Positions 1-64,000 of a DNA stretch of 64,000 nucleotides are shown here, piece after piece (position 1 is the first letter of the stretch; each line of letters starts with the position of its first letter). Origin of the DNA: Malacoraja senta (Eukaryota); contig JAXLNO010005841.1 of the NCBI GenBank assembly GCA_038087875.1, positions 3,534,001 through 3,598,000 on the forward strand, written 5' to 3'. The translations under genes and the position numbers were made by a program. The notes below the pieces were generated by a model. It had not been told where the DNA came from. It saw nothing but the letters and a program-made list of their open reading frames with translations, and did not search any database.

Positions 1-5
1 CCAAG
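1..5 (+). CDS. 3' end of the signal-peptide exon of MAG/Siglec-like gene copy 1
   Basis: CCAAG|GTAAAA is identical to 61412-61422, where the full exon (MIWQYCFPLLLLQ-G, phase-1 donor) is visible. Confidence 0.75.
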
Positions 6-613
6 GTAAAATCGGCAACGTTTCGCATGGATTGCTTACATCCCTGGCAAATTATAATAGTGATACGATGGGGCTAATGTCAACATGGACGCAGTGTGGT
101 AACGCACACGAGTCGTCCATCACCGTTGAGGCCACGGAGTCAATTAGTTCAACATCTCAATTGTCGGAATCATCGTCTCTCATCCATCCTTCGCCAACCG
201 CAGTTGCACTGGACACGTTTTGTGTACAGAGAAGGGCGGGTGCCTGGAATGCACAGCTGGAGTAGTGGTGGAGGGAGATACGATAGTTGCAATTAAAATT
301 ATTTTGAATAGGTCCACAGGTATATGCAGCGAATGGTGTGATATGATTTATGAGTAGGCGGAGGAGATTGATGTGGCATCATGTTCGGCATCGTTGGGGC
401 AGCGATCTCGGATATTTGCAGGGGAGAATGTTGTGGATAAAGAAACAATCTTCTGGATTTCCCAGCGGATCAGGCAACCATTGTGCAGAGAAATGACCAA
501 ACGACGTTCCGGGTCGAGGCCCTTCACGCGTCAGAGTGAGTGGAAGGGAGATAAGAAGTATAAGATGTAGGCGAGATATGATTGATTGATTGATTGATTC
601 ATAGATTCATTGT

Positions 614-1742
614 TGATGAGGGAGGAGTTGGCCAAAGTTGACTGGAAAGATACTGTAGCAGGGATGACAGTGGAACAACAATGGAGGTATTTCGAGGAAT
701 AATACAGAAGGTGCAGGATCAGTTCATTCCAAAGAGGAAGAAAGATTCCAAGGGGAGTAAGGGGCGACCGTGGCTGACAAGGGACGTCAGGGACAGTACA
801 AATATATAAGAGAAGAAGTACAATGTAGCAAAGATGAGCGGGAAGCAAGAGGATTGGGTAATGTTTTAAGAGCAACAGAAGATAACTGAAAAGACAATAC
901 GGGGAGAAAAGATGAGGTACGTAGGTAAGCTAGCCAAGAATATAAAGGAGGATAGTAAAAGCTTCTTTAGGTATGTGAAAAGGAAAAACATAGTTAAGAC
1001 CAAAGTTGGACGATTGAAGACTGAAAAGGGTGAATTTATTATGGGGCATAAGGAAATGGCAGATTAGTCGAACAGGTACTTTGGATCCCTCTTCACTAAG
1101 GAGGACACAAACAATCTTCCTGAAGTACTAGTGTCCAGAGGATCGGGGGTGATAGAGGATCTGAAGGACATCCACATTAGGCTGGAAATGGTGTTGAGTG
1201 GACTGATGGGACTGAAGGCTGATAAATCCCCAGGGACTGATGGTCTGCATCCCAGGGTACTTAAGGATGTGACTCCATAAATCGTGGATGCATTGGTGAT
1301 AATTTTCCAATGTTCTAAAGATTCAGGATCCGTTCCTGTGGATTGGATGGTAGAAAACAGGGAATTATAGACCAGTTCGCCTGACATCGGTGGTGGGGAA
1401 GATGCTGCAGTCAATTATTAAAGATGAAATAGCGGCACATTTGGATAGCAGTAACAGGCTCGGTATGAGTCAGCATGGATTTACGAATGGGAAATCATGC
1501 TTGACTAATCTTCTGGAATTTTTTGAGGATGTGACTAGGGAAATGGACAAGGGAGAGCCAGTGGATGAGGTGTACCTGGACTTTCAGAAAGCATTTGATA
1601 CGGTCCTATATAGGGGATTAGTGAGCAGAATTAGGGCACATTTTATTGGGGGTAGAGTGCTGACATGCATAGACAATTGGTTGGCTGTCAGGAAACAAAG
1701 TATAGGGATTATCGGGTCTCTGCTTTGTAGGCAGTGACTAGT
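614..1742 (+). mobile_element. CR1-clade LINE ORF2 fragment (decayed)
   Basis: KSPGTDGLHPRVL, QHGF..GKSCLTNLLEFFE, YLDFQKAFD. Confidence 0.9.
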
Positions 1743-1745
1743 TTG

Positions 1746-3505
1746 GTACTACTCCAGAATCTAAGGAGTTTTGAAAAATTATCAAATGCATCCACTATTT
1801 CTGGGGCTACTTCCGTAAGTACTCTGGGATGCAGCCTATCTGGCCCTGGGGATTTATCGGACTTTAATCCATTCAATTTACCTAACACCACTTCCCGGCT
1901 AACCTGGATTTCACTCAGTTCCTCTATCTCATTTGGCCCGCGGTCCCCTGCTATTTCTGGCAGATTATTTATGTCTTCCTCAGTGAAGACAGAACCAAAG
2001 CAGTTCTTAAATTGGTCTGCCATGTCCTTGTTCCCCATGATCAATTCACCTGTTTCTGACTGCAAGCGATCTACATTTGTTTTAACTAATCCTTTTCTCT
2101 TCACATATCTATAAAAACCTTTGCAGTCAATTTTTATGTTCCCTGCCAGTTTTCTTTCATAATCCATTTTCCCTTTCCTAATTAAGCCCTTTGTCCTCCT
2201 CTGCTGGACTCTGAATTTCTCGCAGTCCTCTGGTAGGCTGCTTTTTCGGGCTAATTTGTACGCTTCATCTTTTGTTTTGATACCATCCCTGATTTCCCTT
2301 GTTATCCACGGATGCACTACCTTCCCTGATTTATTCTTTTGTCAAACTGGGATGAACAATTGTTGTAGTTCATCCATGCAATCTTTAAATGCCTTCCATT
2401 GCATATCCACCGTCAACCCTCTAAGAATCAATTGCCAGTCTATCTTGGCCAATTCACGTCTCATACCCTCAAAGTTACCTTTGTTTAAGTTCAGAACCCT
2501 TGTTTCAGAATTAGCAATGTCACTCTCCATCCTAATTAAGAACTCAACAATATTATGGTCACTCTTGCCCAAGGAGCCACGCACAACAAGACTGCTAACT
2601 AACCCTTCCTCATTTCACAATACCCAGTCTAGAATAGCCTGCTCTCTCGTTGGTTCCTCTGCATGTTGGTATAGAAAACTATCCCGCATACATTCCAAGA
2701 AATCCTCTTCCTCAGCACCCCTGCCAATTTGATTCACCCTATCTATATGTAGATTGAAGTCACCCATTATAACTGTTTTACCTTTGTTGCACGCATTTCT
2801 AATTTCCTGTTTGATGACATCCCCAACTCCTGTTAGGTGGCCTGTACACAACACCCACTAGCGTTTTCTGCCCCTTAGTGTTTCGCAGCTCTACCAATAT
2901 CGATTCCACATCCCCCAAGCTAATGTCTTTCCTTTCCATTGCGTTAATCTCCTCTCTAACCAGCAACGCTACCCCACCTCCTTTTCCTTTCTGTCTATCC
3001 CTCCTGAATATTGAATATCCCTGGATGTTCAGCTCCCAGCCTTGGTCACCCTGGAGCCATGTCTCCGTGATCCCAACTATATCATACTCATTAATAGCTA
3101 TCTGCACATTCAACTCATCCACCTTATTACGAATGCTCCTTGTATTGAGACACAAAGCCTCCAGGCTTGTTTTTACAACGCTCTTACCCCTTATACAATT
3201 ACGTTGAAAAGTAGCCCTTTTTGATTTTTGCCCTGGATTTGTCTGCCTGCACTTTTACTTTTCCCCTTGCTACCTATTGCTTCTACCCTCATTTTACACC
3301 CCTCTGTTTCTCTGCTCACACATTTACGAAACCCACCAACTCTTATTCTCTGTTTATTATTTTGTTCTTCTTTCACCCCTACATGTTGGGTCTGAGTGCT
3401 TCCCTTCTCTGCCTCGTGCCTCACACACTGTCTACTAGCTTTCTCTATTTGAGTCCCTCCCCCCAACCGTTCTAGTTTAAACTCTCCCCAGTAGCCTTTG
3501 CAAAT
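1746..3505 (-). mobile_element. CR1-clade LINE fragment (end of ORF1 plus ORF2 endonuclease)
   Basis: CLNTRSIRNK..GITETWL..GGGVALLV, MGDFN, SDHN motifs; frameshifted. Confidence 0.92.
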
Positions 3506-11546: not shown

Positions 11547-13052
11547 AGAAACATAGAAACGTAGAAAATAGGTGCAGGAGAAGGCCATTCGGCCCTTCGA
11601 GACTGCACCGCCATTCAATATGATCATGGCTGATCATCCAACTCAGTATCCTGTACCTGCCTTCTCTCCATACCCCCTGATACATTTACCCACAAGGGCC
11701 ACATCTAACTCCCTCTTAAATATAGCCAATGAACTTGCCTCAACTACCTTCTGTGGCAGAGAATTCGAGAGATTCACCACTCCCTGTGTGAAAAATATTT
11801 TTCTCATCTCGGTCCTAAAAGATCTCCCCTTTATCCTTAAACTGTGACCCCTTGTTCTGGACTTCCCCAACATCGGGAACAATCTTCCTGCATCTAGCCT
11901 GTACAACCCCTTAAAATTTTTGTAAGTTTCTATAAGATCCGCCCTCAATCTTCTAAATTCTAGCGAGTACAAGGCAAGTCTATCCAGTCTTTCTTCATAT
12001 GAAAGTCCTGACATCCCATGTATCACCGGGGAACCTTCTCTGTACTCCCTCTATGGCAATAATGTCTTTCCTCAGATTAGGAAACCACAACTGTACGCAA
12101 TACTCCAGGTGTGGTCTCACCGAAACCCTGTACAAATGCAGTAGAACCTCCCTGCTCCTATACTCACATCTTTTTGCTATGAATGCTAACATACCATTCG
12201 CTTTCTTCACTGCCTGCTGCACCTGCATGCCTACTTTCAATGACTGGTGTACCATGACACCCAGGTCTCGTTGCATCTCCCCTTTTCCTAATCGGCCACC
12301 ATTCAGATAATAGTCTACTTTCCTGTTTTTGCCACCAAAGTTGATACCCTCACATTTATCCACATTATACTGCATCTGCCATGCATTTGCCCACTCACCC
12401 AGCCTATCCAAGTCACCTTGCAGCCTCCTAGCGTCCTCCTCACAGCTAACACTGCCCCCCAGCTTCGTGTCATCCGCAAACTTGGAGATGTAGCATTCAA
12501 TTCCCTCGTCTAAATCATTAATATATATTGTAAATAGCTGGGGTCCCAGCACTGACCCTTGCGGTACCCCACTAGTCATTACCTGCCATTCTGAAAAGGA
12601 CCCGTTTACTCCTACACTTTGCTTCCTGCCTGCCAGTCAGTCTCTATCCACATCAATACTGAACCCCCAATACCATGTGCTTTAAGTTTGTATACTAATC
12701 TGTTATGTGGGACCATGTCGAAAGCCTTCTGAAAGTCCAGCTATAACACATCCACTGGTTCTCCCTTATCCACTCTACTAGGTACATCCTCGAAAAATTC
12801 TATAAGATTCGCCAGACATCATTTACCTTTCATAAATCCATGCTGACTTTGTCCAATGATTTCACCACTTTCCAAATGTGCTGCTATCCCATTTTTAATA
12901 ACTGACTCTAGCAGTTTCCCCACTACCGATGTTAGACTAACTGGTCTGTAATTCCCCGTTTCCTCTCTCCCTCCCTTTTTAAAAAGTGTGGTTACATTAG
13001 CTACCCTCCAATCTTTAGCAACTACTCCAGAATCTAAAGAGTTTTGAAAAAT
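11547..13052 (-). mobile_element. CR1 LINE 3' portion (RT plus 3'UTR tail)
   Basis: SGVPQGSVLGP, KFADDTKL, RPHLEYCVQ; (CTATGTTT)-like tail. Confidence 0.95.
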
Positions 13053-26671: not shown

Positions 26672-26793
26672 CAGAAGATTCCACCGAATCCACCCCATGC
26701 CTCCCACTGAACATTCACTCGTATGAACGGGATATCGGTCTGTCTGCTGGGATCCTGCTTAATATCGGTCTACTTCTTTATGGTTTACAGTAA
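26672..26793 (+). CDS. Candidate stalk plus hydrophobic anchor exon, copy 3
   Basis: Same acceptor; AEDSTESTPCLPLNIHSYERDIGLSAGILLNIGLLLYGLQ*. Confidence 0.5.
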
Positions 26794-27340
26794 GGAATAC
26801 CGACCAAAACGCAGAAGAGGCGCATGTTCCTCTGCTGTTTTTTCTTACGTGCAGCAGTTTCTTTAAATATTTTAAGTGGATAGATCAAGCAAGTGGCGGA
26901 ACGGTGGGGCGGCGGTAGAGTTGCAGAATCACAGCATCAGAGACCCTGGTTCGATCCTGACTACGGGCGCTTGTCTGTATGGAGTTTTACGTTCTTCCAG
27001 TGAACTGCGTGGGCTTTCTCCGGTAGCTCTGGTTTCCACCCACACTCCAAAGACGTACAGGTTTGTAGGTTAATTGGCTTGGTAAAATTGTAAATTGTCC
27101 CTTATGTGTGTTGGATAGTTTCAATGTGCGATTGCAGTTAGGGGTCGGTCGGGCTGTTGGCCGGACGGCCGACCGACCGGTGGGTGCTGTGAGGGGTCGG
27201 TCGGGCTGTCGGCCGGCCGGTGTGTGCAATGAGGGGTCGGTGGGCTGTCGGCCGGCAGGTGGGTGCAATGAGGCGTCGGTCGAGCTGTCGGCCGGCCGGT
27301 GGTTGCTGAGAGGGGTCGGTCGGTGTAGATTAACAATATG

Positions 27341-28377
27341 TAGCAATGTTACAAAATTTTGAGACTTAAAAAATAAAGTCTGCAATTTATCCCATCAGAT
27401 AAAATATAAAAAGAAGTTTAATTTGACACCTAATTCACTTTCATATCTTCAGTATTAAAAAGGTTATGGCCATTTTCATACTCGGAAATTAGCATCTTGT
27501 TCCCTATTGCTTTTCCATTGATTTAACACAAAAGCTGTGATCGAGGACAGTCAAAAGCACATAACTTTCTTAAAAATTAAGAGAACTGAAATAAATTTTC
27601 AGTTATTATAAATTGAAGCATTCAGAAACAAATATGAAACAATCTTACTTAGATGACATGAAAAGAAAGCATATAATTAGTTAGTTACCTAATTGTAGCT
27701 AATTACAAAATTCAATTACTAGATCTAAATATCTATCAATTTCTTAAGAATAGATTAACATTTATAAATAGCCTAAGTGTCCAAATAACATTCACACAAG
27801 AATTCACAATATAACATAATTTTTAAATTTCATTGTCATGGATTTACAGGCCAAATGGAAGGAATTGAATGTTTAATACCTGTAAATTAATGGTCATTTA
27901 AATCATTTTACGAGTGAGGTTTTCTGGAACACGATCATTTGGAACGTTGATTTGCGGTGAATTTAACCCCATATCGGCATGAAAAATTCTGCCGTTAGTT
28001 GGGGGAAAAGAATCACCGTTTCGCATTTTAAAAAAAATGAATTAAAGGCTTCTTAAGAAGCACTTTTATACATTAAAATAAACTACTTTCCTTTACCTGC
28101 CCCGTGTGCGAAAATCGTCCCCGTTGTCGGCGTTGTTTCGAAGCTGATTTTAAAATAACTCCAGCGCTGACATTGTCCATTTAATAAAAATAAAAAATAC
28201 ACAAAACGCCCGTAGGAACGATTTTTCAGCAAACGCTTGTACTCCAACGAAATATAATACAGGACAAGGTAGGAGAAACCCGCGTTTTAACCCCCCCCCC
28301 TCAAAGGCGCCAAAATCGCGCACACGGCCAGTGGCAGAATTGCAGCGCCGCTGACGGTAAGTATTGTAACATACCTA
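27341..28377. mobile_element. Non-autonomous TIR DNA transposon (~1.04 kb); truncated left halves in array units 1 and 2
   Basis: Left end TAGCAATGTTACAAAA versus reverse complement of the right end TAGGTATGTTACAATA; flanking 7-bp repeat CTATATG (CAATATG in this copy, CTATATG in units 1-2). Confidence 0.7.
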
Positions 28378-31400: not shown

Positions 31401-32295
31401 AATATGAACCTGGGGAACTTAGATGGAGATAGGGTGAACTTTAAATTTTCGATCATATGTACTTCGCCGCCATAAATGTATACCGTGATCGCGGTGTCTG
31501 TATTTCATTGCTTCCTGAAGTCAATCACAATATCCTTTGTCTTTGGTGACGTTGAGTGAAGGGTTGTTGGCTGTGCACCAGGTTACGATGTTCCCAATCT
31601 ATCTCTGCATGGTTTGATTGCACTCATGTGTGGTCTCTTTAATATAGTTTAGTTTAAGGATACAGCGCGGATACAGGCCCTTCGGCTCACCGAGTCGGCA
31701 CCGATCATCAATCCTCGCACAATAAAACAAGTCTACGCACACGAGGGACAATTCTAAACTCATACCAAGTAAAAAAAAAGCAATCAAATTAACCTGCAAA
31801 CCTGTAAGTCTTTGGAGTGTGTGAGGAAACCGAAGATCCGGGAGAAAACCCTCCAGGTCATGGGAAGAACGTGCAAACTCCGTACAGACAGCACCCGGAG
31901 TCAGGATGGAACCCAGGTCCCTGTCCCTGCGGCAACTCTACCGATGCGCCACCGTGCCGCAACTCTACAAGGATAGGACGCAAACAAATGTATCTCTGTA
32001 TCTCGGCACACGCGACAGCAATAGCTAATATGAATGTATTGATAAGTTTATTGGCTAAGTATTCACATACAAGGAACTTGCCTTGTTGCTCCGCCCACAA
32101 GTGACAACATGACATACAGTGAAAGTTAAGAATGAAACATCAATAATAAAACATTATTGATTAAACATGTGAAGTAAATCAAATACCAGAGCGAAAGGAG
32201 GCAACAGATTTTTGGTTATTGAGTAGAGTTACTACTCGTGGAAAAAAACTGTTTATATGTCTGGCTGTGACAGCTTTGATAGTCCGGAGTCGCTC

Positions 32296-33282
32296 CTAAG
32301 CCTGGCCGCCCATGCTTGCAGGCGGAATTACTCCATCGTCAGCCAGCAGGGAAGTGTTCCATTTGCAACATAATTTGTGTAGCGCATCGCGAAGCTTGCA
32401 TACACCGAACACGATGACCATGGGATTCAAAACTGCGTAGCAGAAGGCATCGTAAAGATACGAAAACTCAAACAACTTCTCCATCATAAATGAACATTGC
32501 GATGATTGGGATATCGCACACAACAAAAATATAATTCTCGCAAAGATAAAGGCAAGAAAAAGCAGATAAAGTGAAACAACCATTGCTATTATGCGCAAGT
32601 GATGATCCCCCTTCTTGGGACGTTTAACGTTGGCGGCGAGCTGCTGAGACGATCGCCGATGTCTCCATAAGACGGAGATGAGGTAAATACAAGAAGTGGA
32701 CATCACTAGAGCGGGGAGCGCAGTTGCAAGGATTAGGCTCATGTATATGTTTAATTCTTCAGTTGCTTCGGGGTTCATTTCCTGCGACCCGTTTGTCCAT
32801 CCAAAATGATAAGATCCGTTCTGGTAATGGCAGGTTAACGCTGCATTGTCGATGTAGCAATTCAACGCTCCCAGAGCGCAGCTGAACAACGCCGTCGCAC
32901 CGACCCAGAGGAAAACCTTGCCGCTGATCACTTGGGCTAGTTTCTTGGCGTTGGGCCGATGGACACTAACGATTTTCAGGCAGTAGAAGAAACAGAGGAG
33001 AGCGCTGACCCAAAAGCTGAGGGAATGGGAGAGCGCGAGGAAGGACATGGCGACCTTTTGCTGGATCTCGCAGTAGTTGTGAATGAAGTCCACGACCATT
33101 GTGAACACCGCCACGAGGATGGTGGAAACATTGGCGACGGCCAGAGCGCTGACGATGACCTCCGCGGGAGGCGCGCTGACTTGACCTAACCCTCGCCACG
33201 AAGTCAGGAGGATGAAGACGTTGGTAATCAATCCGAAAATGCTGAAGAATCCGACAACAGCTGACTTCACCCACAATTCCAT
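32296..33282 (-). CDS. TAS2R: Taste receptor type 2 (bitter receptor, TAS2R/T2R family), intact, 328 aa, single coding exon
   Basis: Seven hydrophobic segments with T2R signatures: GLITNVFI (TM1), SLSFWVSALLCFFYCLKI (TM3), ECL2 NGS sequons, LISVLWRH (TM5), FGVCKLRDAL (TM7/H8). The symbol is family-level only. Confidence 0.92.
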   Translation of the reverse strand: MELWVKSAVVGFFSIFGLITNVFILLTSWRGLGQVSAPPAEVIVSALAVANVSTILVAVFTMVVDFIHNYCEIQQKVAMSFLALSHSLSFWVSALLCFFYCLKIVSVHRPNAKKLAQVISGKVFLWVGATALFSCALGALNCYIDNAALTCHYQNGSYHFGWTNGSQEMNPEATEELNIYMSLILATALPALVMSTSCIYLISVLWRHRRSSQQLAANVKRPKKGDHHLRIIAMVVSLYLLFLAFIFARIIFLLCAISQSSQCSFMMEKLFEFSYLYDAFCYAVLNPMVIVFGVCKLRDALHKLCCKWNTSLLADDGVIPPASMGGQA

Positions 33283-33549
33283 TTTCCTGTAGAAATAAAT
33301 TTAACCAAGGCTATAATAGATAGTTGCGTGCCCAGAAAATCTCACGTTATTGAAAACCACATTGCAAAAACAATTGTGTCTGTTTGAAATATTTGTTAAC
33401 AGCTCGAAATATTAAGACTAGCAATATCAAAGTTATAATTCTTGCAGGATTTCGAAATGCGAAGGACATTTTAATAGCCATAATTTTATGGTTATTACTG
33501 CGTTCTCACAATGCCTAATGCTAGGTTACATCGTTTAATAGAGTATCGT

Positions 33550-36900: not shown

Positions 36901-38869
36901 ACAACTGGTTCTATTTGATCTTCCGTGTTTGTGCACGTCGAGTTGATTGCATTAGTCGAAACAGGGCGGACCACGTGAAGTTTGCAATCTTCCACCCCTT
37001 TATTGATCATAAGATCATACGACATATGAGCGGAATTAGACAATTCGGACCATCGAGTAAACTCCGCAATTCGATCATGGCATATCTATTTTTTCCTCGC
37101 AACCCCATTCTCAAGCGTTCTCCTCATAAACTTTAGTACCCTTACTTTTCAAGAATCTGTCAAACTCCGTCATAAACATACTGAATTACTTGGCCTCCAC
37201 AGGCGTCTGTGGGAAGACATCCCACAGATTATTCTCCTACTGGATGAATAAATTCCTCCTCATCTCCATTTAAAATATACACAATTTTATTCTGAGGCTG
37301 TGGCCTGTAGTCCTCGACTCTCCCAATACTGCAATCATCCTCTCCACGTCCATCCCCTCCTCTGTCGCAGCCTGTCTTTATTCGATACATTTCTATGAGA
37401 TCCTCCCTCATCCTTCTAAAACTACAGAGAGTTCGGGCACAGAGCCACCTGTTCGATTTATCTAGGTATTATAGCAATAGACAAATGGAAGCTCAAGATG
37501 AAACTGGTAGATTGAATTTAGGTATTCTGGATGGAGGTAAGGCATTTGTAGTTTCAAAAGGCATCGGATGAGATTTTAACAACACATTCAATGAAATGAC
37601 TTACCGTTTCCTTAACTCGCATTCGAATTATCTTTTTTGAAGTTTGTCCATCTGCCCTTCCGTAATGCTATCATTTGTTTCATATTTCAATTCTATGTCG
37701 TGCAATAACGAGGAAATTTTTGATGTATACAAATCAATGAGATTGTTCAGACAAATGCTCCTGAATGCAAGGGATACTTTATGATCCACTTCATCTTTCC
37801 GATTACCCTATTGATCTATTTCATTGGCGCTTGCTTTGTCTATCACCATTATTAGTCTTTATATATATAATATTTCCGCCGAAGGTCACATCAGCATTAC
37901 TGTTTGCTTATTTCAACAGATTAATCTCTTTCCAGTTGTTCATTTGAATTAAGGTAACTTTTACTGACGACCTTAATTATTTGCATGGGATTGGGCTGTT
38001 TATAAAATGTGCTTACTCCGGATATTTGCTCAGAAATTACTGCCAGAATACCAGCAGGTGTGTTTGAACCTTCTGGTTGTCTTCATAAATCTTCATACGG
38101 CATATTTGTCCAAGGTGAGGGATAACCACAACAATTTTGGTTCAATTGCTGAGGGGAGATTCGAGTCTTGTTAGCTATCGCGTATGAACAAGTTAAGTTA
38201 AATCTATAAGCCAGCAGGTACCACAGGCAGCGAAGAAAGCAAATGGCATGTTGGTGCAAAGAGTGTGAGTGAGAGAGACAGACAGAGACAGAGACAGAGA
38301 GAGTGAGAGAGACTGAGAGAAGAGGGAGAGAGAGATAGAGAGAGAGCGAGAGAGAGATAGAGAGAGAGAGACAGAGACAGACATAGATAGAAAGGGAGAG
38401 AGGGAGAGAAANNNNNNNNNNNNNNNNNNNNNNNNNNNNNNNNNNNNNNNNNNNNNNNNNNNNNNNNNNNNNNNNNNNNNNNNNNNNNNNNNNNNNNNNN
38501 NNNNNNNNNNNNNNNNNNNNNNNNNNNNNNNNNNNNNNNNNNNNNNNNNNNNNNNNNNNNNNNNNNNNNNNNNNNNNNNNNNNNNNNNNNNNNNNNNNNN
38601 NNNNNNNNNNNNNNNNNNNNNNNNNNNNNNNNNNNNNNNNNNNNNNNNNNNNNNNNNNNNNNNNNNNNNNNNNNNNNNNNNNNNNNNNNNNNNNNNNNNN
38701 NNNNNNNNNNNNNNNNNNNNNNNNNNNNNNNTGAGAGGGAGAGTCGGTTGAGCGGTGGGAGGGAGTGGGGAGTCCGTAGAGGTAGGGACGGGAGGACGAT
38801 AGAGGGAGAGGACGAGAGGATGTGTGGGTGGGAGATGGGAGCAGAGGTACAGAGGATGGAGAAGAAAGG

Positions 38870-50500: not shown

Positions 50501-51501
50501 AGCTCTCTGTTCTCAGCTCATGCCTAGGCCCTCTTGTTTCTTAATCCTCTACACTGGGTAAAAAAGACTGGGGGTATTACTTAATCGAACAAACGCGGGG
50601 CTTCATACTTCTTCAGACCTCGGGCAGCACGGTTCCGCAGCGGTAGAGTTGCTGCCTGATCTACGGGTGCATGTATGTACGGAGTTCGTACCTTCTCCCC
50701 GTGACCGTCTGGGCTTTCTCCAAGATAATCGGTTTCCTCTCGCACTCCGAAGACGTACGGGTATGTAGGTTGATTGGCTTGGAACATTATTAAAACATGT
50801 TACTAGTGCGTGTAGGATGGTGTTAATTTGCGGGGATCGCTGGTAGGCGCGGTCTCGGTGGGTGGAAGGGCCTTTCCGCGCTGTATCTCTAAAATTAAAA
50901 ACTAAAATTCTGATAGAAGTATATGAAATTATGTGGTTCGACAGGATAGGCTATCGCTGATCATGGTCAGCCATTATCACATTGAATGGCGGTGTTGGCT
51001 CGAAGGGCCGAATGGCCTACACTTGCACCTATTGTCCATTGTCTATTGTCTAGTAAACCCATCCCCACCCGTTCTCGCCCCGCCGTCCCCGTGACCCCCC
51101 CCCCCTCCGATGGAAATGACAAAGTTGCGGAGGCGAAGATGTGGGGGCATAGATTGTCGGTGAGAGGGACAATATTTGATGCAGACGTATGCGGCAAATA
51201 TTTTTACATGGAGAATGCTGGGTACCTGGACCGCGTTTTCGGTGGTGATGATGGAGCCAATACGGCAGTGGCGTTTAAGAGTGTTTCGACTGGCACAAGG
51301 ATATGCAGGGAATTGATCGCAATGGATCATGTGCACCCAAATAAGACTATTTTGTCTGGGCATAAGGTTCGGTGCAAATATTCTGGGCGAATGGGGCTGT
51401 CCCTGTGTTATAAAATTCTATGTTTTTATGGTAATTCTGGCTATTTCAGGACATCCGCTGTGGATATGTTTTGATACTAACCCCTCGTGTTTCTCTTGCA
51501 G

Positions 51502-52415
51502 TTAATTTAGTGGCGATTGTGATCCTGTCCCGAGGAAACTGCGGCCTGTCCAAATGTATCAGCCGGTATCTCCTGTCTATGGCGGTGACGGATCTTTTGG
51601 TCATTCTCACTGCAGTGATGTTAAACCGGATACCCGCCATTTATTTTCCGGGTAGCTTCCTCGCCATAACTCCCATATGTAGTTTCAGCATTGCGTTGAT
51701 TTATGCAGCGAGAGACAGTTCGGTGTGGCTGACAGTCACGTTCACATTTGATCGATTTGTAGCCATCTGTTGCCAGAAGCTCAAAGCAAGATATTGCACC
51801 CACAGAACAGCGGGCATTGTTGTCTCAACCGTCTGTGCGTTGGGCTGTCTGATCAATGTTCCCTGGTACTTCCTGCACGAACCCATCTATATCATTGACA
51901 ATGTCCCTTGGTATTGCAAACGGAGGGATATCCGTTATTCTTTCCTTTTGTGGACAATATTTGATTGGGTTGATCGCGTTTTAACCCCTTGTCTCCCCTT
52001 CATTCTTGTCATCGTGTTCAATGCACTAACCGTCCGGTACATACTGGTGGCCAGTCGAGCACGGAAGAGACTCCGTTCTTGCTCCACCGGTGAGAAACTG
52101 AGCGACCCGGAAATTGAAAACCGCAGCAAGTCCATTATCCTCCTTTTTGCCATCTCAGGCTGTTTCATCCTGCTGTGGATGCCGTATGTTATCCAATTCT
52201 TTGTAGAAAGGTTTCAAGTTGGTTATAAAATTAATGGCTACAGTGACCCCAGGTTTATATTGATGGAAAGTGCTAATGTGGTTCAATTGTTGAGCTGCTG
52301 CACAAACACGTTCATTTATGCAGTTACACAAAATAAATTCAGGGAGCAGGTGAAGGCAATAGTGAAATATCCATTCAACCAATTGCATTCGTTCATTAAT
52401 TTCCGTAAGTCATAA
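51502..52415 (+). CDS. GPR139/GPR142-like class A orphan GPCR, main coding exon (first exon not located)
   Basis: ttctcttgcAG acceptor, phase 1; VNLVAIVILSRGNCGLSKCI, MAVTDLL, SVWLTVTFTFDRFVAICC, FILLWMP, SCCTNTFIYAVTQ; AATAAA at 52474-52479. Confidence 0.88.
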
Positions 52416-55173: not shown

Positions 55174-55439
55174 TAATAGTTAAAACTCCCGACAACACCA
55201 TATGTCAGGCGTTAGAAATGTTAATGAACGAAACTCTTGACGTATACATGGGAATATTGGAGGGAACCGAACAATAAACTGGAATGGCAATGCGGGCTTC
55301 GACGTTACATTGACAGGTAGGGTTGAGGAGAATCACTCAGTTTTCTGTAGAAGTAAGAGTATACATAGAATGAATAGGTCGGAGAAACATAGATAATAAG
55401 TGCAGGAGGAGGCCATTTGGCCCTTGGAGCCAGAACAGC

Positions 55440-56143
55440 ATCAGTCTATGAAAGTAAGCATGCAGGTACAGCAGGCAGTGAAGAAAGCGAATGGCATGTT
55501 GGCCTTTATAACAAGAGGAATCGAATATAGGTGCAAAGAGGTCATTCTGCAGTTGTACAGAGCCCTAGTGAGACCACACCTGGAGTATTGTGTGCAGCTT
55601 TGGTCCCCTAATGTGAGGAAGGACATTCTTGCCATTGAGGGAGTGCGGCGTAGGTTTACAAGGTTAATTCCCGGGATGGCGGTACTGTCATATGCTGAGA
55701 GGATGGAGCAGCTGGGCTTGTACACTCTGGAGTTTAGAAGGATGAGAGGAGATCTCATTTAAACACATATGATTGTTAAGGGCTTGGACACAGGAGAGGC
55801 AGGAAACATGTTCCCGATGTTGGGGGAAGTTCAGAACCTGGGGCCATCTGTTTAAGAATAAGGAGTAAGCCATTTAGAACGGAGACGAGGAAACACTTTT
55901 TCCTCACAGAGAGTGGTGAGTCTATGGAATTCTCTGCCTCGGAGGGCGGTGGAGGCAGGTGCGCTGGATGCTTTCAAGAGAGATCTAGATAGGGCTCTTA
56001 AAAATGGCGGAGTCAGGGGATATTGGTAGAAGGCAGGAAGGGGGTACAGATTGTGGATGATCAGCCTTGATCACATTGAATGGCGGTGCTGGCTCGAAGG
56101 GCCGAATGGCCTTCTCCTGCAACTATTGTCTATTGTCTATTGT
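55440..56143 (+). mobile_element. CR1 3' end
   Basis: KKANGMLAFI..RPHLEYCVQ..LEFRRMRGDLI; (CTATTGT)n tail. Confidence 0.92.
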
Positions 56144-58270
56144 CCACCAATTCAGCTTCGTCCCCTCCGTATCGTGGGGCTTTAATCGACCCGTTCGCGG
56201 GTCCTGTCATCACCCGGCGCGGGTTAAAACCGGCCGCGGGCCTTCCATCCTCCGGCGGGGGCTTCAACATCGGGAAGCAGCAATTTTACCGCGAGGTGGT
56301 GGAAGATCCCGCGGCCGATTTTAAGCAGCGCCGCTCCGGGCGATGAAAGGCCCCGCGAACGGGCCGATACAAGCTCCGCTCTATGATCTGTGCTCTACCA
56401 GGACGTCTCCCTCCTCCAATCACCGCGCTCCATCCTCAGTCCCACCCCCCTACTTCCGCATCTGACCGACACCTATCTCCTCCAATCACCGTACTCTATC
56501 CTCAGTCCCACCCCCTACCTCCGCCTCCGATCGACACTTCCGTCTTCCAATCATTGCGCTGAATCTTCATGTCCCGGCCCCCCATAGCCTGTAGTCCGAC
56601 GTCTCTCTCGTCCAATCGCCGCCCTCGATCATCAGTCCCACTCCCACTGTCTCGCGGAAAGCGGAGATCTTTAATAGTTTTTTTTCACCGAATTTCGAAA
56701 TCCGGATTACAAAACATGGAAGGGGGGGGGGGGGGGTGGATTGTCCCCACCTCTCAAAACATGGAGGGGACGTGTGCCTCCGCCCCCCCCCCCCCGGGAT
56801 TTCCGCCCATGCAGGGATGTGCAGACGCGAGAAGTTCACATCCGGAAACATCCCAGTAAGTAGGAGAATAAAGGCCAGCCATGCTTGTAGACATACCACC
56901 GATTGAGCTCAAACAAGTGGACGACCTCGGCCGGCCTCACATGACACTGGTTAGCATAATTGATACCACCTTCGCCCAGGGGAGAAGTGGAGCATTATGT
57001 GATCGCTACCCTCCAAGTGAGTTACTTGTGAATATTCAGAATTATGAGGGTAGTTAGCAGAAACGATTGAAATTCACCAACTCTACCCCGAAGACCGACG
57101 TGTGTTGGTTAAAGCTAAAATCCCAAGGGATATGAGTGTCAATATGGCCCAGCGGAAATTCGGGATAATCTCTTGACGACTAGCGAGGATCCTGGCAATG
57201 AGGACAGATACCTTTGTATAAAGGAGTTAGTGTGACAGCGCCCAGGGCGGTGACGGGTAGTGGGAGGGGGATGGGCAGGTAATTGCCCGGAGTTGGGAAC
57301 TGCTCGTCTCCTTGTCACCGCGTGGGTTTCCATGTTTGCTCCTGGGGGAAATTGTCGGTAATGTGAAGGAAATAGGCGTAAACGTGAGATAACATATAAC
57401 TAGCGTGAAAGAACAATTGATGGTCCATTGAACCTCGGTGGGCTAAAGGGCCTGCTTCCCCGCTGTAGCCATAAACTAAACGGAACAAACTGAACTGANN
57501 NNNNNNNNNNNNNNNNNNNNNNNNNNNNNNNNNNNNNNNNNNNNNNNNNNNNNNNNNNNNNNNNNNNNNNNNNNNNNNNNNNNNNNNNNNNNNNNNNNNN
57601 NNNNNNNNNNNNNNNNNNNNNNNNNNNNNNNNNNNNNNNCTAAACTAAATTCATCCCTTCCCGCAGTACTCTCTCACGATTCTCCTCGCTTCATATTCTC
57701 CAAGCAGGTAACATTATAAATGACCATCTGCACCAGGGACACAGTCTGATCGTTCACTGAATTTGCAAGGCGATTCATACAGAAGATTGTATTTGCACTT
57801 CTCGTGTGGTTTCCAAATGGTTGTGGTTTATGTCGTCTAACTCGAAAGTATCAACTGATGAGAAATGTCTTAGGTTTAATAGGTTTTCAATCATTCCGGC
57901 AACTGTTTGAAATATGGACCCGGAAACACCTTCTACGAGTTAAAGGAACTGCAGATGCTGGAAAATCGAAGGTACACAAAAATGCCGGAGAAACTCAGCG
58001 GGTGCAGCAGCATCTATGGAGCGAAGGAAATAGGCAATGTTTCGGGCCGAAACCCTTCTTCAAACACCTTCTAAGAGGACGTCCAATTGCCGCCTATCTG
58101 ACGCGGCTAGTAGTCGTCCCACATCCGTTTCCCTTCAAATGGCTATGCTGGTACAGAAGCCGATCGATCCGGCTCATTTCGACATTTCAAAATCAACATC
58201 GGTTCTGAGGAGAAAAGAGTCCAACGAATCCAGTGTCAGGTTTTAACGCTGCTTTATCTGAAATTTACAG

Positions 58271-58534: not shown

Positions 58535-61376
58535 GTAAGTAAGACTTTAGCTTCTCTCCAGTTGATCGAATTTGCTCTCTATTCATATGACAAAAGAATG
58601 GGGGGGGGGGGGGGTGTTGTGATCTGGTTGTGTGAGCCCGGTTGTGTGAGAACGCGAAAGAGTGCGTGGGTGATGGGGGGGGGGGGGTTACATTTGATTA
58701 GTTACATACGCTGCTGTTGTGTGGATCTGTGTGTATGCGCGTACGCCTTCGAGCTGTGTGTTTATGGAAGGAGTGCATGTGTTTTATGTGCGGGTGCGTG
58801 CACGCAGCACGTGTACGACAGGGCCTGTGTGCGTTTATTGAACGAGTGTGTGTTATGTATATGCTGTGTTTTGTGTGTTCTTTACATACAGTATGTGCCA
58901 TGTGCACATGAAGTGGGGACTGTGTGTATATGCAAGCTGTGTGAGACTGGGTATTCAGTGCATCTGTGAGCGCGGGGTGGGTTGCATGTGCATAGATACA
59001 TAGATACATAGAAAATAGGTGCTACCCTCCAATCATCAGGAACTACTCCTGGGGGGTTTGATTGTGTGTGTTTGTGTTTGTGTGTACGTGTGTATGTGTG
59101 TATGTGTTCAATGATCAGATGATTCAATTATACTTTATTGTTCACAAGTGCCTAGGTACAGCGAAATGCTTTGTTTTGCACAATACCTGGTAAAAACATA
59201 CAGCAGACCTCACCTCGGCAGTCCACAAATGTCGCCACGTTTCTGGCCCTGACGAAGTTACAGAAATTTATCTTCTGCTTGCCGCGGCACGTGGTAGCAG
59301 GCTGAGTCCCTTCCCCCACACCCTTCCCCGCCGGCTCCCCCCTTCAATCTCGGCGCAGCCCCCACCCCTTCGGTCTCGGCGGCAGNNNNNNNNNNNNNNN
59401 NNNNNNNNNNNNNNNNNNNNNNNNNNNNNNNNNNNNNNNNNNNNNNNNNNNNNNNNNNNNNNNNNNNNNNNNNNNNNNNNNNNNNNNNNNNNNNNNNNNN
59501 NNNNNNNNNNNNNNNNNNNGTGTTTTTAGGTGTGTGTGTGTCTATAAGTGTGTGTGTGTTTGTTTGTGGGTTTGTGCTTGTAAGTGTGCGTGTGTGTTTG
59601 GAGGTAAATGTTTGTGTATGTGTGTGTGTTGGTGCAAGTCTGTATGTATGCTCTGCATTCTTGCCTCCTTGCCAAAATAAAATGTCCACATGATTTCTCT
59701 GAAATCCATTGTGAAATGTAAACTTTTCGCTCCCATTTTTTGTGAAGTTATAGTAACCTCCGAATGTCAATCTACAAGTACGTTTCATTGTAAAGTCTGC
59801 TTTCGACTTTGTTTCTGGAACAAGTGTTGCAACGTGGCCTCATGCAGTTGTTGCAATACCGTTTTCCAGCCAAAATAATTTGGCTGCAAATCCCGCAGCA
59901 GAACTTAAAGGCAAAATCATCACTGCTGAATGTCCCAGGAGTCATGTGGACGGTGAAGTTCATGAAGGGAGGGGTAACTCAGGGTTCTGGCCCTGGTCGA
60001 TTGAGCCATTTAGTTGGGGAATGAGCGTGTTGACAGCCAATAACGCAATTAAAATAAAATAAAATAAAATTTCTTTTTGAGCCAAGATCATTGTTTTTTT
60101 TAAATCTGATTCGGGTATTTTCCTGAACTCACAGACCCAGAACGATGGTTAAAATCGTCGAGCTTTACATGACAAGAAAAGACCATTCTGTCCCTCTGGT
60201 TCGTGCTGAACAGGTTACCTAACTGAGCTTGAAGATAGACACAAAGGCTGTAGTAACTGAGTGATTAAGGCAGCATCTTTGGTGACGTTTCGTGTCGAGA
60301 CTCTTCTTCAGGCTGAGAGTCAGGGGAGAGAGAAACGAGACATATACAGTAGCAGGTAATATAGAGAGATAGAAAGCATATGAATGAAACATTTGCAAAA
60401 TGTAACGAAGATCAAGGAAAGGTGAAGCCCACCGTGGTCCATTGATATTATCTGAAAAAAGTGCAGATTGCAATAGAATCATTGACACATACATCTAGTC
60501 CAAACTTAAAAAGAGAATGGCGGCGTCTGGAACGCGCTGCCAATGGCAGTAGTGGAAGCAGATCGATAGTGGTATTAGGCACTCGGACATGCAGGATATG
60601 GAAGATTGTGCCTCGTGTAGCCGGGGTGAAATTATTTGAACTCAGCATCGCGTTCGGTACAAACATTATGGGTCAAAAAGCTTGTTCACGTGCAGTTCTA
60701 TTTTCTATGCTCTTCTATTTCCCGATCTCAGAACCTTATCTTCCATGCATCTTTCCTCTTCATATAACTATGCGGTGGCACGGTGGCACGGTGGCGCAGC
60801 GGTGGATTTGCTGCTTTACCCGGGTTCGATCCCGACTATACGGAATATGCACTTTCTCGAAGTGAACTGCGTGGATTTTCTCCGGGATCTCCTGCGATCT
60901 GTTGGTTTATCGATTATGTTATGAATATTTTTCGTTCGGATTTCTGAGGCGCAAAACCGCAAAGCGAGAATATATCTATTAAGAATTAGTTTAGGTTAAT
61001 TTATAGATACAGCGCGGAAACATGCCCTTCGGCCTGCGGAGTCCGCGCCGACCAACGATTCCTGCACACGAACATCATCCTACACACACTAGATACAATT
61101 TAAAATGTTATCGATGCCAAATAACCAACAAATCATTACGTCTTTGGAGTGTGGGAGGAAAGCGCTGCTCCAGCCGTAAACCCATGCAGGTTACGTGGAG
61201 AACGTACAAACTCCGGACAGACAGTACCGGGAGGCAGGATGGAACCCAGGTCTCTGACACTCTAAAGCACCAACTCTATACGCTGTTCCACCGTGACGCC
61301 TATAGTAATATTATTTGATTTTTCTTTTTTCCAGAACCCGATAACCTTAAACGGACGATATATTCAAGAAAACACA

Positions 61377-61416
61377 ATGATCTGGCAATATTGCTTCCCT
61401 CTGTTACTTCTCCAAG
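61377..61416 (+). CDS. Signal-peptide exon of MAG/Siglec-like gene copy 2
   Basis: ttttttccAG acceptor at 61333-61334 (implies an upstream 5'UTR exon); MIWQYCFPLLLLQ-G then GTAAAA; joins in frame to a V exon like 4026 (LLLLQ-GVQPG-EW). Confidence 0.85.
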
Positions 61417-64000
61417 GTAAAATCGGCAACGTTTCGCATGGATTGCTTACATCCCTGGCAAATTATAATAGTGATACGATGGGGCTAATGTCAACATGGA
61501 CGCAGTGTGGTAACGCACACGAGTCGTCCATCACCGTTGAGGCCACGGAGCCAATTAGTTCAACATCTCAATTGTCGGAATCATCGTCTCTCATCCATCC
61601 TTCGCCAACCGCAGTTGCACTGGACACGTTTTGTGTACAGAGAAGGGCGGGTGCCTGGAATGCACAGCTGGAGTAGTGGTGGAGGGAGATACGATAGTTG
61701 CAATTAAAATTATTTTGAATAGTTCCACAGATATGCAGCGAATGGTGTGATATGATTTATGAGTAGGCGGAGGAGATTGATGTGGCATCATGTTCGGCAC
61801 AGGAATGGTGGCTCAGGGGACCAGTTCCTCTGGTGTACGGTTCTATGTTTGCGGTGATATGGATGAGAAATAAGAAATCCAAAGGAGCCCATCGTTGGGG
61901 CAGCGATCTCGGATATTTGCAGGGGAGAATGTTGTGGATAAAGAAACAATCCTCTGGATTTCCCAGCGGACCAGGTAACCATTGTGCAGAGAAATGAACA
62001 AACGACCTTCCGGGTCGAGGCCCTTCACGCGTCAGAGTGAGTGGAAGGGAGATAAGAAGTATAAGATGTAGGCGAGATATGATTGATTGATTGATTGATT
62101 CATAGATTCATTGTTGATGAGGGAGGAGTTGGCCAAAGTTGACTGGAAAGATACTGTAGCAGGGATGACAGTGGAACAACAATGGAGGTATTTCTAGGAA
62201 TAATACAGGTGCAGGATCAGTTCATTCCAAAGAGGAAGAAAGATTTCAGAGGGGAGTAAGGGGCGACCGTGGCTGACAAGGGAGGTCAGGGACAGTACAA
62301 ATATATAAGAGAAGAAGTACAATGTAGCAAAGATGAGCGGGAAGCAAGAGGATTGGGTAATGTTTTAAGAGCAACAGAAGATAACTGAAAAGACAATACG
62401 GGGAGAAAAGATGAGGTACGTAGGTAAGCTAGCCAAGAATATAAAGGAGGATAGTAAAAGCTTCTTTAGGTATGTGAAAAGGAAAAACATAGTTAAGACC
62501 AAAGTTGGACGATTGAAGACTGAAAAGGGTGAATTTATTATGGGGCATAAGGAAATGGCAGATTAGTCGAACAGGTACTTTGGATCCCTCTTCACTAAGG
62601 AGGACACAAACAATCTTCCTGAAGTACTAGTGTCCAGAGGATCGGGGGTGATAGAGGATCTGAAGGACATCCACATTAGGCTGGAAATGGTGTTGAGTGG
62701 ACTGCTGGGACTGAAGGCTGATAAATCCCCAAGGCCTGATGGTCTGCATCCCAGGGTACTTAAGGATGTGACTCTATAAATCGTGGATGCATTGGTGATA
62801 ATTTTCCAATGTTCTAAAGATTCAGGATCCGTTCCTGTGGATTGGATGGTAGATAATGTTATCCCACTTTTTAAGAAAGGCGGGAAAGAGAAAACAGGGA
62901 ATTATAGACCAGTTCGCATGACATCGGTGGTGGGGAAGATGCTGCAGTCAATTATTAAAGATGAAATAGCGGCACATTTGGATAGCAGTAACAGGCTCGG
63001 TATGAGTCAGCATGGATTTACGAATGGGAAATCATGCATGACTAATCTTCTGGAATTTTTTGAGGATGTGACTAGGGAAATGGACAAGGGAGAGCCAGTG
63101 GATGAGGTGTACCTGGACTTTCAGAAAGCATTTGATACGGTCCTATATAGGGGATTAGTGAGCAGAATTAGGGCACATTTTATTGGGGGTAGAGTGCTCA
63201 CATGCATAGACAATTGGTTGACTGTCAGGAAACAAAGTATAGGGATTATCGGGTCTCTGCTTAGTAGGCAGTGACTAGTGTGGTACTACTCCAGAATCTA
63301 AGGAGTTTTGAAAAATTATCAAATGCATCCACTATTTCTGGGGCTACTTCCGTAAGTACTCTGGGATGCAGCCTATCTGGCCCTGGGGATTTATCGGACT
63401 TTAATCCATTCAATTTACCTAACACCACTTCCCGGCTAACCTGGATTTCACTCAGTTCCTCTATCTCATTTGGCCCGCGGTCCCCTGCTATTTCTGGCAG
63501 ATTATTTATGTCTTCCTTAGTGAAGACAGAACCAAAGCAGTTCTTAAATTGGTCTGCCATGTCCTTGTTCCCCATGATCAATTCACCTGTTTCTGACTGC
63601 AAGCGATCTACATTTGTTTTAACTAATCCTTTTCTCTTCACATATCTATAAAAACCTTTGCAGTCAATTTTTATGTTCCCTGCCAGTTTTCTTTCATAAT
63701 CCATTTTCCCTTTCCTAATTAAGCCCTTTGGCCTCCTCTGCTGGACTCTGAATTTCTCCCAGTCCTCTGGTAGGCTGCTTTTTCGGGCTAATTTGTACGC
63801 TTCATCTTTTGTTTTGATACCATGCCTGATTTCCCTTGTTATCCACGGATGCACTACCTTCCCTGATTTATTCTTTTGTCAAACTGGGATGAACAATTGT
63901 TGTAGTTCATCCATGCAATCTTTAAATGCCTTCCATTGCATATCCACCGTCAACCCTCTAAGAATCAATTGCCAGTCTATCTTGGCCAATTCACGTCTCA
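61412..64000 (+). repeat. Segmental duplicate of 1-2463
   Basis: Base-by-base near identity including the same two head-to-head CR1 fragments; copy 1 has two deletions (near 391 and 1352). Confidence 0.97.

What the first reader, a model, noticed from the sequence alone, without database searches (positions are those of the whole stretch)
32296..33282. Intact bitter taste receptor in an apparently chondrichthyan genome, with class-A-like NP in TM7
Seen: a full 328-aa T2R ORF with no disruptions. TM7 reads LNPMVIVFG (NP at 32422-32427) where bony-vertebrate T2Rs usually have HS/HPxIL, and TM2 reads LAVAN instead of LAxSR. Established: T2Rs were long thought absent from cartilaginous fishes and were only recently reported there as very small repertoires. 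Inference: an early-branching T2R whose motifs may be closer to class A GPCRs (NPxxY).
Basis: partly seen in the sequence, partly recalled or inferred. Interest (0 to 1): 0.72.

Follow-up and report, generated by a model that had tools for sequence, protein, structure and literature searches.

The report
Intact ray/skate bitter taste receptor T2R1
This is an intact copy of the single bitter-taste receptor gene (T2R1) already described in sharks and rays. Its unusual NP motif is shared with the sawfish, and the more interesting lead is that the gene sits inside a recently duplicated ~61-kb block.

Summary
Window 32296-33282 (minus strand) is an uninterrupted 328-codon ORF, and N-P is encoded at 32422-32427.

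It is a true T2R:
- Pfam TAS2R scores 70.7 bits over the full length, with no V1R match.
- The predicted fold matches human TAS2R4, TAS2R46 and TAS2R14 best.

It belongs to the published cartilaginous-fish T2R1 clade (Behrens et al. 2023, Policarpo et al. 2024):
- It is 64% identical to sawfish T2R1 and 47% to catshark T2R1, and the three form a clan with 100/100 support.
- dN/dS against sawfish is 0.21, there is no rate acceleration, and every family-conserved residue is kept. It is probably functional.

The motif claim is only partly informative:
- N286-P287 does sit at 7.49-7.50. N is shared by all three elasmobranch sequences. P is shared with sawfish but is A in the functional catshark receptor.
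Early-branching bony T2Rs vary widely at 7.49 and mostly have N at 2.50.
- I could not fetch V1R/ORA sequences, so ancestry is unresolved.

New lead: window 1-2463 recurs at 61412-64000 (98-99% identity), so the T2R lies in a ~61.5-kb tandem duplication unit. The scan's first readers also noted two more intact 987-bp T2R-like ORFs elsewhere on this same genome piece. I could not read them. Published work reports no T2R1 duplication, and pseudogenes in skates.

The parts
32296..33282 (-). Single-exon coding sequence (328 codons plus stop) of the elasmobranch T2R1 bitter taste receptor ortholog
   Evidence: Intact ORF. Pfam TAS2R 70.7 bits over the full length. 64% identity to Pristis pectinata T2R and 47% to Scyliorhinus canicula T2R. 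Clan with 100/100 support. dN/dS 0.21 against Pristis. AF2 model with 7 TM helices plus helix 8, pLDDT 83.5. Foldseek top hits are human TAS2R4, TAS2R46 and TAS2R14.
32422..32427 (-). Codons for N286-P287, positions 7.49-7.50 of the TM7 activation motif (here N-P-x-x-I; H-S/P-x-x-L in mammalian T2Rs)
   Evidence: AAT CCC. Positions assigned by ungapped alignment to TAS2R46. Sawfish has N-P and catshark has N-A.
33130..33144 (-). TM2 motif L-A-V-A-N, with N51 at position 2.50
   Evidence: N at 2.50 in 3 of 3 elasmobranch and 13 of 25 bony T2Rs. R occurs only in one tetrapod clade.
32974..32988 (-). TM3 motif F-Y-C-L-K, the T2R counterpart of the class A DRY motif
   Evidence: Y100 is invariant in all 28 sequences. 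In the 27 other sequences K103 is found in 24 and F99 in 22. The motif is defined in PMC11641376.
32812..32820 (-). N155-G-S sequon in extracellular loop 2, a likely N-glycosylation site
   Evidence: N155 is conserved in 24 of the 27 other T2Rs, and N-G-S/T is present in all three elasmobranch T2R1 proteins. The role of the ECL2 sequon in T2R function is from my own knowledge and was not tested here.
1..2463 (.). Left copy of a ~61.5-kb tandem segmental duplication whose unit contains the T2R
   Evidence: Self-megablast: 1-390, 389-1354 and 1352-2463 match 61412-61799, 61890-62853 and 62889-64000 at 98.3-99.1% identity.
61412..64000 (.). Start of the next duplication unit. It runs off the end of the window.
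   Evidence: Offsets of 61411, 61501 and 61537 show two small indels between the copies.

Best explanation
The ORF is the ortholog, in a ray or skate (batoid), of T2R1, the one bitter taste receptor gene of sharks and rays and the sister lineage to all bony-vertebrate T2Rs. It is an intronless class T GPCR with seven TM helices and a short N-terminus, and it is most likely functional. By inference from the tested catshark and bamboo-shark orthologs, it would be expressed in oral taste cells. There it would bind both xenobiotic bitter compounds and endogenous steroids or bile acids in a pocket formed by TM3, TM5, TM6 and TM7, and signal through a G protein. Its TM7 switch reads N-P-x-x-I, a lineage variant of the T2R H-S/P-x-x-L motif. 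Together with N1.50 and N2.50 it could form an all-asparagine polar core. The gene lies inside a unit of a young ~61.5-kb tandem duplication, so this genome may carry more than one copy.
For: Shown here:
- Intact 328-aa ORF.
- Pfam TAS2R 70.7 bits over the full length, with V1R not listed even at E up to 10.
- All 28 aligned relatives match TAS2R.
- The nearest proteins are annotated T2Rs of Pristis (64%) and Scyliorhinus (47%). The next nearest are lungfish, coelacanth and amphibian T2Rs at 17-24%.
- ML tree: elasmobranch clan 100/100, window plus Pristis 94/97.
- dN/dS 0.21, with differences by codon position of 76, 62 and 146.
- Relative-rate test: 25 window-unique against 21 Pristis-unique changes, p = 0.56.
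- Every column conserved in at least 80% of the family is retained, apart from one elasmobranch-wide change and one poorly aligned C-terminal column.
- AF2 model of 7 TM helices plus helix 8, pLDDT 83.5, pTM 0.83. Best structural matches are TAS2R4, TAS2R46 and TAS2R14.
- Duplication arms at 98-99% identity.
From papers:
- T2R1 is a single gene in 12 cartilaginous fishes, sister to bony T2Rs, with V1R/ORA as the outgroup.
- The catshark and bamboo-shark receptors respond to amarogentin, denatonium, colchicine and a bile acid.
- The catshark gene is expressed in taste tissue (PMC10691231).
Against: - No expression or ligand data exist for this copy.
- dN/dS is averaged over a very long branch (dS 1.14), so it cannot exclude recent relaxation of constraint.
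- Behrens et al. found T2R1 pseudogenes in two skates, and Policarpo et al. list 0 complete T2R genes in Amblyraja. If this genome is a skate, a decaying locus is plausible.
- I had no V1R/ORA sequences, so the placement against that family rests on Pfam scores and on the published tree for the orthologs.
Confidence: 0.88

Rival explanations
1. It is an ORA/V1R-type olfactory receptor rather than a taste receptor.
For: T2R and V1R/ORA are sister families (PMC10691231). 4 of the 28 aligned T2Rs also give weaker V1R Pfam matches. A first-stage note on another copy speaks of a 'mosaic of T2R and V1R motifs' (unchecked).
Against: The window protein gives no V1R Pfam match at E up to 10, but a full-length TAS2R match. 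All sequence relatives down to E 1e-3 are T2Rs. The F-Y-x-x-K motif is present. Its orthologs were placed inside T2R with maximal support in a published tree that included ORA1-6 (PMC10691231).
Confidence: 0.02
2. It is a recently inactivated or redundant copy whose reading frame is still open by chance. This could be one member of a decaying duplicated array, in line with the reported pseudogenisation of T2R1 in skates.
For: Skate T2R1 genes were reported as pseudogenes (PMC10691231), and Amblyraja has 0 complete T2R genes. Other agents call this genome a skate. The neighbouring GPR139-like ORF in the same unit lacks its first ~19 residues, so the block does carry damaged genes.
Against: There is no stop or frameshift in 984 coding bases. 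All family-conserved residues are kept and there is no rate acceleration relative to sawfish. dN/dS is 0.21.
Confidence: 0.08
3. The NP motif marks retention of the class A N7.49-P7.50 state from the common ancestor of the T2R and V1R families, which would make elasmobranch T2R1 a structural intermediate.
For: N7.49 is present in all three elasmobranch T2R1 proteins, and P7.50 in both batoids. P7.50 also occurs in 5 of 25 bony T2Rs, mostly lungfish and coelacanth. A TM7 proline is listed as conserved in V1Rs (PMC12294341). N2.50 is isosteric with the class A D2.50.
Against: Position 7.49 is one of the most variable motif positions in non-amniote T2Rs (S, Q, C, T, N, A and I in my sample). N appears independently in two amphibian T2Rs. 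The catshark has A at 7.50. Y7.53, DRY and D2.50 are all absent. No outgroup was available to polarise the change.
Confidence: 0.25

Closest known systems
Cartilaginous-fish T2R1 (Behrens, Lang and Korsching 2023, PMC10691231; also Policarpo et al. 2024, PMC10869828; Itoigawa et al. 2024, cited in PMC11641376 but not in the library)
   Same: - Single coding exon of about 330 aa with the same start.
- 64% and 47% identity to the sawfish and catshark members, and a 100/100 clan with them.
- Shared clade-specific residues: A7.46, N7.49, S212 and a two-cysteine ECL2 with the N-G-S sequon.
- One copy within the 64-kb window.
   Different: - The host is a batoid other than the sawfish, and the exact protein is not in the public protein collection searched.
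- The gene is intact, whereas the two skates examined in the paper had pseudogenes.
- It lies in a young ~61.5-kb tandem duplication, whereas the paper stresses that no duplication was seen in any species.
Bony-vertebrate T2Rs (Pfam PF05296; human TAS2R4, TAS2R14 and TAS2R46 structures)
   Same: Same Pfam family, the same 7TM plus helix 8 fold (TM-score about 0.77 by target), N1.50, the F-Y-x-x-K motif in TM3, the L-x-x-H segment at the end of TM5, G-x-x-K-L-R after TM7, and the ECL2 sequon.
   Different: Only 17-24% identity. TM7 reads A7.46 and N-P-x-x-I instead of P7.46 and H-S/P-x-x-L. TM2 ends in A-N rather than S-R, although N2.50 is common outside the tetrapod clade that carries R.
V1R/ORA olfactory receptors (Pfam PF03402)
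   Same: Sister family of intronless chemosensory GPCRs of about 310 aa with a short N-terminus.
   Different: The window protein gives no Pfam V1R match, and all of its detectable relatives are T2Rs.

Membership tests
T2R / TAS2R (class T GPCR, Pfam PF05296) | Full-length match to the TAS2R profile above the curated cut-off, and better than the match to V1R | tested here: met
   70.7 bits against a 22.2-bit cut-off, covering profile positions 12-300 of 303. V1R is not listed at E up to 10.
T2R / TAS2R (class T GPCR, Pfam PF05296) | Seven TM helices, a short N-terminus, and a fold closest to solved T2Rs | tested here: met
   The AF2 model has pLDDT 83.5 and shows seven TM helices plus helix 8 (TM4 drawn as two adjoining helices). 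Foldseek ranks 1-4 are TAS2R4, TAS2R46, TAS2R4 and TAS2R14. Class A GPCRs score only slightly lower, so fold alone does not discriminate.
T2R / TAS2R (class T GPCR, Pfam PF05296) | Intronless coding region | tested here: met
   One uninterrupted ORF aligns end to end with its orthologs.
T2R / TAS2R (class T GPCR, Pfam PF05296) | TM3 motif F-Y3.50-x-x-K3.53 | tested here: met
   F99-Y100-C-L-K103. The motif is defined in PMC11641376.
T2R / TAS2R (class T GPCR, Pfam PF05296) | TM7 motif H7.49-S/P7.50-x-x-L7.53 and TM2 motif L-A-x-S-R2.50 (mammalian hallmarks) | tested here: not met
   The window has N-P-x-x-I and L-A-V-A-N. In my sample these hallmarks hold only for one tetrapod clade: R2.50 in 7 of 7 and H7.49 in 6 of 7, against 0 of 18 other bony T2Rs. 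They therefore define a subclade and not the family.
T2R / TAS2R (class T GPCR, Pfam PF05296) | Monophyly with T2Rs to the exclusion of V1R/ORA | tested here: inconclusive
   No V1R/ORA sequences could be fetched, so my tree is unrooted. A published tree places the orthologs inside T2R with maximal support (PMC10691231).
T2R / TAS2R (class T GPCR, Pfam PF05296) | Activation by bitter compounds, and expression in taste cells | not testable with these tools
   Shown only for the catshark and bamboo-shark orthologs (PMC10691231).
Elasmobranch T2R1 clade | Groups with the published T2R1 sequences, following the species relationships | tested here: met
   Clan with 100/100 support, and the window is sister to the sawfish at 94/97. 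Only 2 of the 12 published sequences were available to me.
Elasmobranch T2R1 clade | Single copy per genome | tested here: inconclusive
   There is one copy in the window, but the window ends repeat at a ~61.5-kb period. First-stage notes list two more intact 987-bp T2R-like ORFs further along the same piece. I could not read that DNA.

The most novel reading that the evidence does not exclude
This batoid, called a skate by other agents of the scan, has multiplied T2R1 by young segmental duplications of a roughly 60-90-kb cassette, giving three or more intact copies. The cassette carries Siglec-like, T2R and GPR139-like genes. That would be the first expansion of the otherwise strictly single-copy cartilaginous-fish bitter receptor, in the very group where it was reported to be decaying.
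Probability: 0.45. Interest if true: 0.6.

Novelty: new member of a known kind. Interest (0 to 1): 0.35.

Why it matters
T2R1 of sharks and rays is treated as the closest living proxy for the first bitter taste receptor. Part of the reason is that it has never been seen to duplicate. The published picture for rays rests on one intact sawfish gene and two skate pseudogenes.

A second intact batoid ortholog under purifying selection shows the gene is kept in at least one more ray lineage. It also gives a second N-P-x-x-I receptor to compare with the functional N-A-x-x-V catshark receptor.

If the tandem copies are real, they would overturn the no-duplication rule. They would also provide young natural paralogs for studying how a broadly tuned ancestral receptor starts to subdivide its ligands. 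On its own, the gene in this window is an ordinary member of a described family.

Tried and rejected
1. A single-sequence phmmer search of PDB found nothing. A profile of 28 T2Rs was needed.
2. P0003, the second-best hit in the exhaustive search, is a spurious repeat protein that matches only a 25-residue ECL2 stretch eight times. I dropped it.
3. The ESM Atlas search with TAS2R clusters excluded gave only generic class A and odorant-receptor clusters at 0.85, below the tool's own reliability level. It yielded no V1R sequences.
4. A second homolog search with the three-sequence profile found no further shark or ray T2R1 proteins. The motif comparison within the clade therefore rests on three sequences.
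5. Catshark locus DNA was not retrievable, so there is no three-way codon analysis.
6. Microsynteny with the sawfish locus (±10 kb) showed only the T2R plus multi-copy transposon-like ORFs and scattered repeats. It neither supports nor contradicts orthology.
7. An exact-protein look-up gave no record, so the species could not be read off.
8. Species identity via the neighbouring GPR139-like ORF was inconclusive. That ORF is sister to a clade of 19 stingray and devil-ray copies and is not close to any annotated skate copy. This is compatible with a batoid outside crown Myliobatiformes, but does not confirm 'skate'.
9. Coordinates beyond the window are not accepted by the notes tool, and its sequence look-up was blank. 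I could not examine the other T2R copies.
10. Model coordinates were not exposed to scripts, so distances within the asparagine core were not measured.

Full report
**Observation.** The window holds an uninterrupted ORF of 328 codons on the minus strand at 32296-33282. Its start codon aligns with the start of the two closest proteins. The codons AAT CCC at 32422-32427 encode N286-P287 in the context L-N-P-M-V-I-V-F-G. L-A-V-A-N is encoded at 33130-33144 and F-Y-C-L-K at 32974-32988. A tblastn of the protein against the whole window finds no second copy or fragment.

**What it is.**
- Pfam's TAS2R model matches with 70.7 bits (cut-off 22.2) across positions 12-300 of 303. The V1R model does not appear even at E up to 10.
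- The word-indexed search of 5.8 billion proteins returned two proteins. One is a Pristis pectinata (sawfish) T2R at 64% identity over 99% of the query. The other is a Scyliorhinus canicula (catshark) T2R at 47%.
- An exhaustive HMMER search of 1.84 billion cluster representatives found 31 proteins at E up to 1e-3. One (P0003) is a spurious repeat protein. All the others carry or sit in clusters with T2R names: lungfish, coelacanth, gar, cichlid, amphibian, turtle, chicken, marsupial and bat. The 25 of them that I aligned are only 17-24% identical to the query.
- Every one of the 28 aligned sequences matches Pfam TAS2R.
- An AlphaFold2 model built on that alignment has pLDDT 83.5 and pTM 0.83, with seven TM helices plus helix 8. 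Its best Foldseek matches in the PDB are human TAS2R4, TAS2R46 and TAS2R14, with TM-scores of 0.76-0.79 by target.

**Placement.**
- In a maximum-likelihood tree (LG+C20+F+G4), the window, sawfish and catshark proteins form a clan with 100/100 support on a long stem. The window is sister to the sawfish at 94/97.
- I could not obtain V1R/ORA sequences, so the tree is unrooted.
- Behrens, Lang and Korsching (PMC10691231) built a rooted tree with ORA1-6. It placed 12 cartilaginous-fish T2R1 sequences, including these two species, as sister to all bony-vertebrate T2Rs with maximal support.
- Policarpo et al. (PMC10869828) independently reported a single T2R in most cartilaginous fishes.
- The window gene is therefore a further ortholog of a described gene.

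**Is it functional?**
- Against the sawfish coding sequence (L001), Nei-Gojobori dN/dS is 0.21, with dN 0.24 and dS 1.14. Differences by codon position are 76, 62 and 146.
- With the catshark as outgroup, the window has 25 unique replacements and the sawfish 21 (p = 0.56). There is no sign of acceleration.
- All columns conserved in at least 80% of the family are retained. These include N1.50, W91, L96, F-Y-x-x-K, the ECL2 asparagines, P190, L205, H208 and G-x-x-K-L.
- The exceptions are S212, which all three elasmobranchs share, and a poorly aligned C-terminal column.
- This argues for a working receptor. However, a dS above 1 means the test averages over a very long time and cannot exclude recent loss of constraint.

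**How it most likely works.** This part is inferred from orthologs and was not tested here. The catshark and bamboo-shark T2R1 respond to amarogentin, denatonium, colchicine, a bile acid and other compounds. The catshark gene is expressed in taste tissue (PMC10691231). The window protein most likely does the same job: a broadly tuned G-protein-coupled sensor for xenobiotic bitter compounds and endogenous steroids.

**The motif claim.**
- The ungapped alignment with TAS2R46 puts N286, P287 and I290 at 7.49, 7.50 and 7.53. The T2R motif there is H-S/P-x-x-L and the class A motif is N-P-x-x-Y (PMC11641376).
- Its weight is limited by four points, all from my 25 bony T2Rs.
  1. H7.49 (6 of 7) and R2.50 (7 of 7) occur only in one well-supported tetrapod clade and in 0 of 18 sequences outside it. 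LAxSR and HS are markers of that clade and not of bony vertebrates as a whole.
  2. Outside that clade 7.49 is S, Q, C, T, N, A or I, and two amphibian receptors have N. N2.50 is the majority state there (13 of 18).
  3. Within T2R1, N7.49 is shared by all three sequences. P7.50 is shared with the sawfish but is A in the catshark receptor, which is experimentally functional.
  4. Other class A hallmarks are absent: there is no DRY, no D2.50 and no Y7.53.
- One real peculiarity stands out. All three elasmobranch T2R1 proteins have A at 7.46. That is where 15 of my 25 bony T2Rs, and 76% of human TAS2Rs (bioRxiv 10.1101/2020.10.23.348706), have the main TM7 proline.
- The batoid receptors therefore carry their only TM7 proline at the class A position, and the catshark receptor has none.
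- N1.50, N2.50 and N7.49 could form a polar core analogous to the class A N-D-N network. This is speculation.
- Polarity cannot be settled without outgroups.

**Context and the more interesting lead.**
- A self-comparison shows that window 1-2463 recurs at 61412-64000 with 98.3-99.1% identity and two small indels. The window therefore spans one unit of a ~61.5-kb tandem duplication plus the beginning of the next, and the T2R lies inside the unit.
- The scan's notes list, further along this same genome piece, two more first-reader reports of intact 987-bp T2R-like ORFs. They start about 170 kb and 258 kb beyond the window's end.
- The notes also list a similar Siglec-like anchor-exon repeat near the first of these, and a T2R/trypsinogen/Siglec-like block at the second.
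- I could not read that DNA, so these remain leads. Other notes on this assembly raise the possibility of haplotype mis-joins.
- Published work states that T2R1 has not duplicated in any species examined, and that repertoires range from zero to one (PMC10691231, PMC11641376). Per-species counts in Policarpo's supplement are 0 or 1, with 0 for the skate Amblyraja.

**Which animal?**
- Follow-up agents on other windows call this genome a skate. My own evidence shows only that it is a batoid.
- The T2R groups with the sawfish.
- The neighbouring GPR139-like ORF (51471-52415) is 85% identical to a Mobula protein. It sits as sister to a clade of 19 stingray and devil-ray copies, and is not close to any annotated Leucoraja, Amblyraja or Rhinoraja copy.
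- The exact T2R protein is not on record in the public collection.
- If the genome is a skate, an intact T2R1 contrasts with the pseudogenes reported for two skates.

**Verdict.** The gene is a new member of a known kind. The NP motif is a batoid-wide variant, as judged from two species, at a variable position, and it is of modest interest. The possible multi-copy state is the item worth following up.

Noticed in passing
window 1-2463 and 61412-64000: The two ends of the window are 98.3-99.1% identical at an offset of 61.4-61.5 kb with two small indels. The window is one unit of a young tandem segmental duplication that includes the T2R.
   Followed up: partly
window 51471-52415 (+): A single-exon class A GPCR ORF belongs to the very large elasmobranch 'probable GPR139' family (2510 proteins at E up to 1e-30). 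It is 85% identical to a Mobula hypostoma protein but starts at that protein's residue 20 and has no ATG. It is probably a 5'-damaged pseudogene, or it has a separate first exon.
   Followed up: partly
window 19237-27690: A tandem triplication of a 3.2-3.5-kb unit at 95-97% identity.
   Followed up: no
window 11643-12636 (-), 13377-14438 (+), 55400-55762 (+): These ORFs have no Pfam match where tested, but they hit several separate places in the 21-kb sawfish locus at 39-56% protein identity. They are probably coding remnants of an interspersed repeat shared by batoids.
   Followed up: no
window 33283-33300 (-) and about 32047-32052 (-): A pyrimidine-rich tract ending in CAG lies 4 nt upstream of the T2R start codon and looks like a splice acceptor, which would suggest a non-coding 5' exon. 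An AATAAA/ATTAAA-type signal lies about 243 nt after the stop codon.
   Followed up: no
window 17132-17582, 18636-18846, 38412-38731, 57499-57639, 59386-59519: Five runs of N (gaps or masked stretches). None touches the T2R ORF, and I left them as they are.
   Followed up: no
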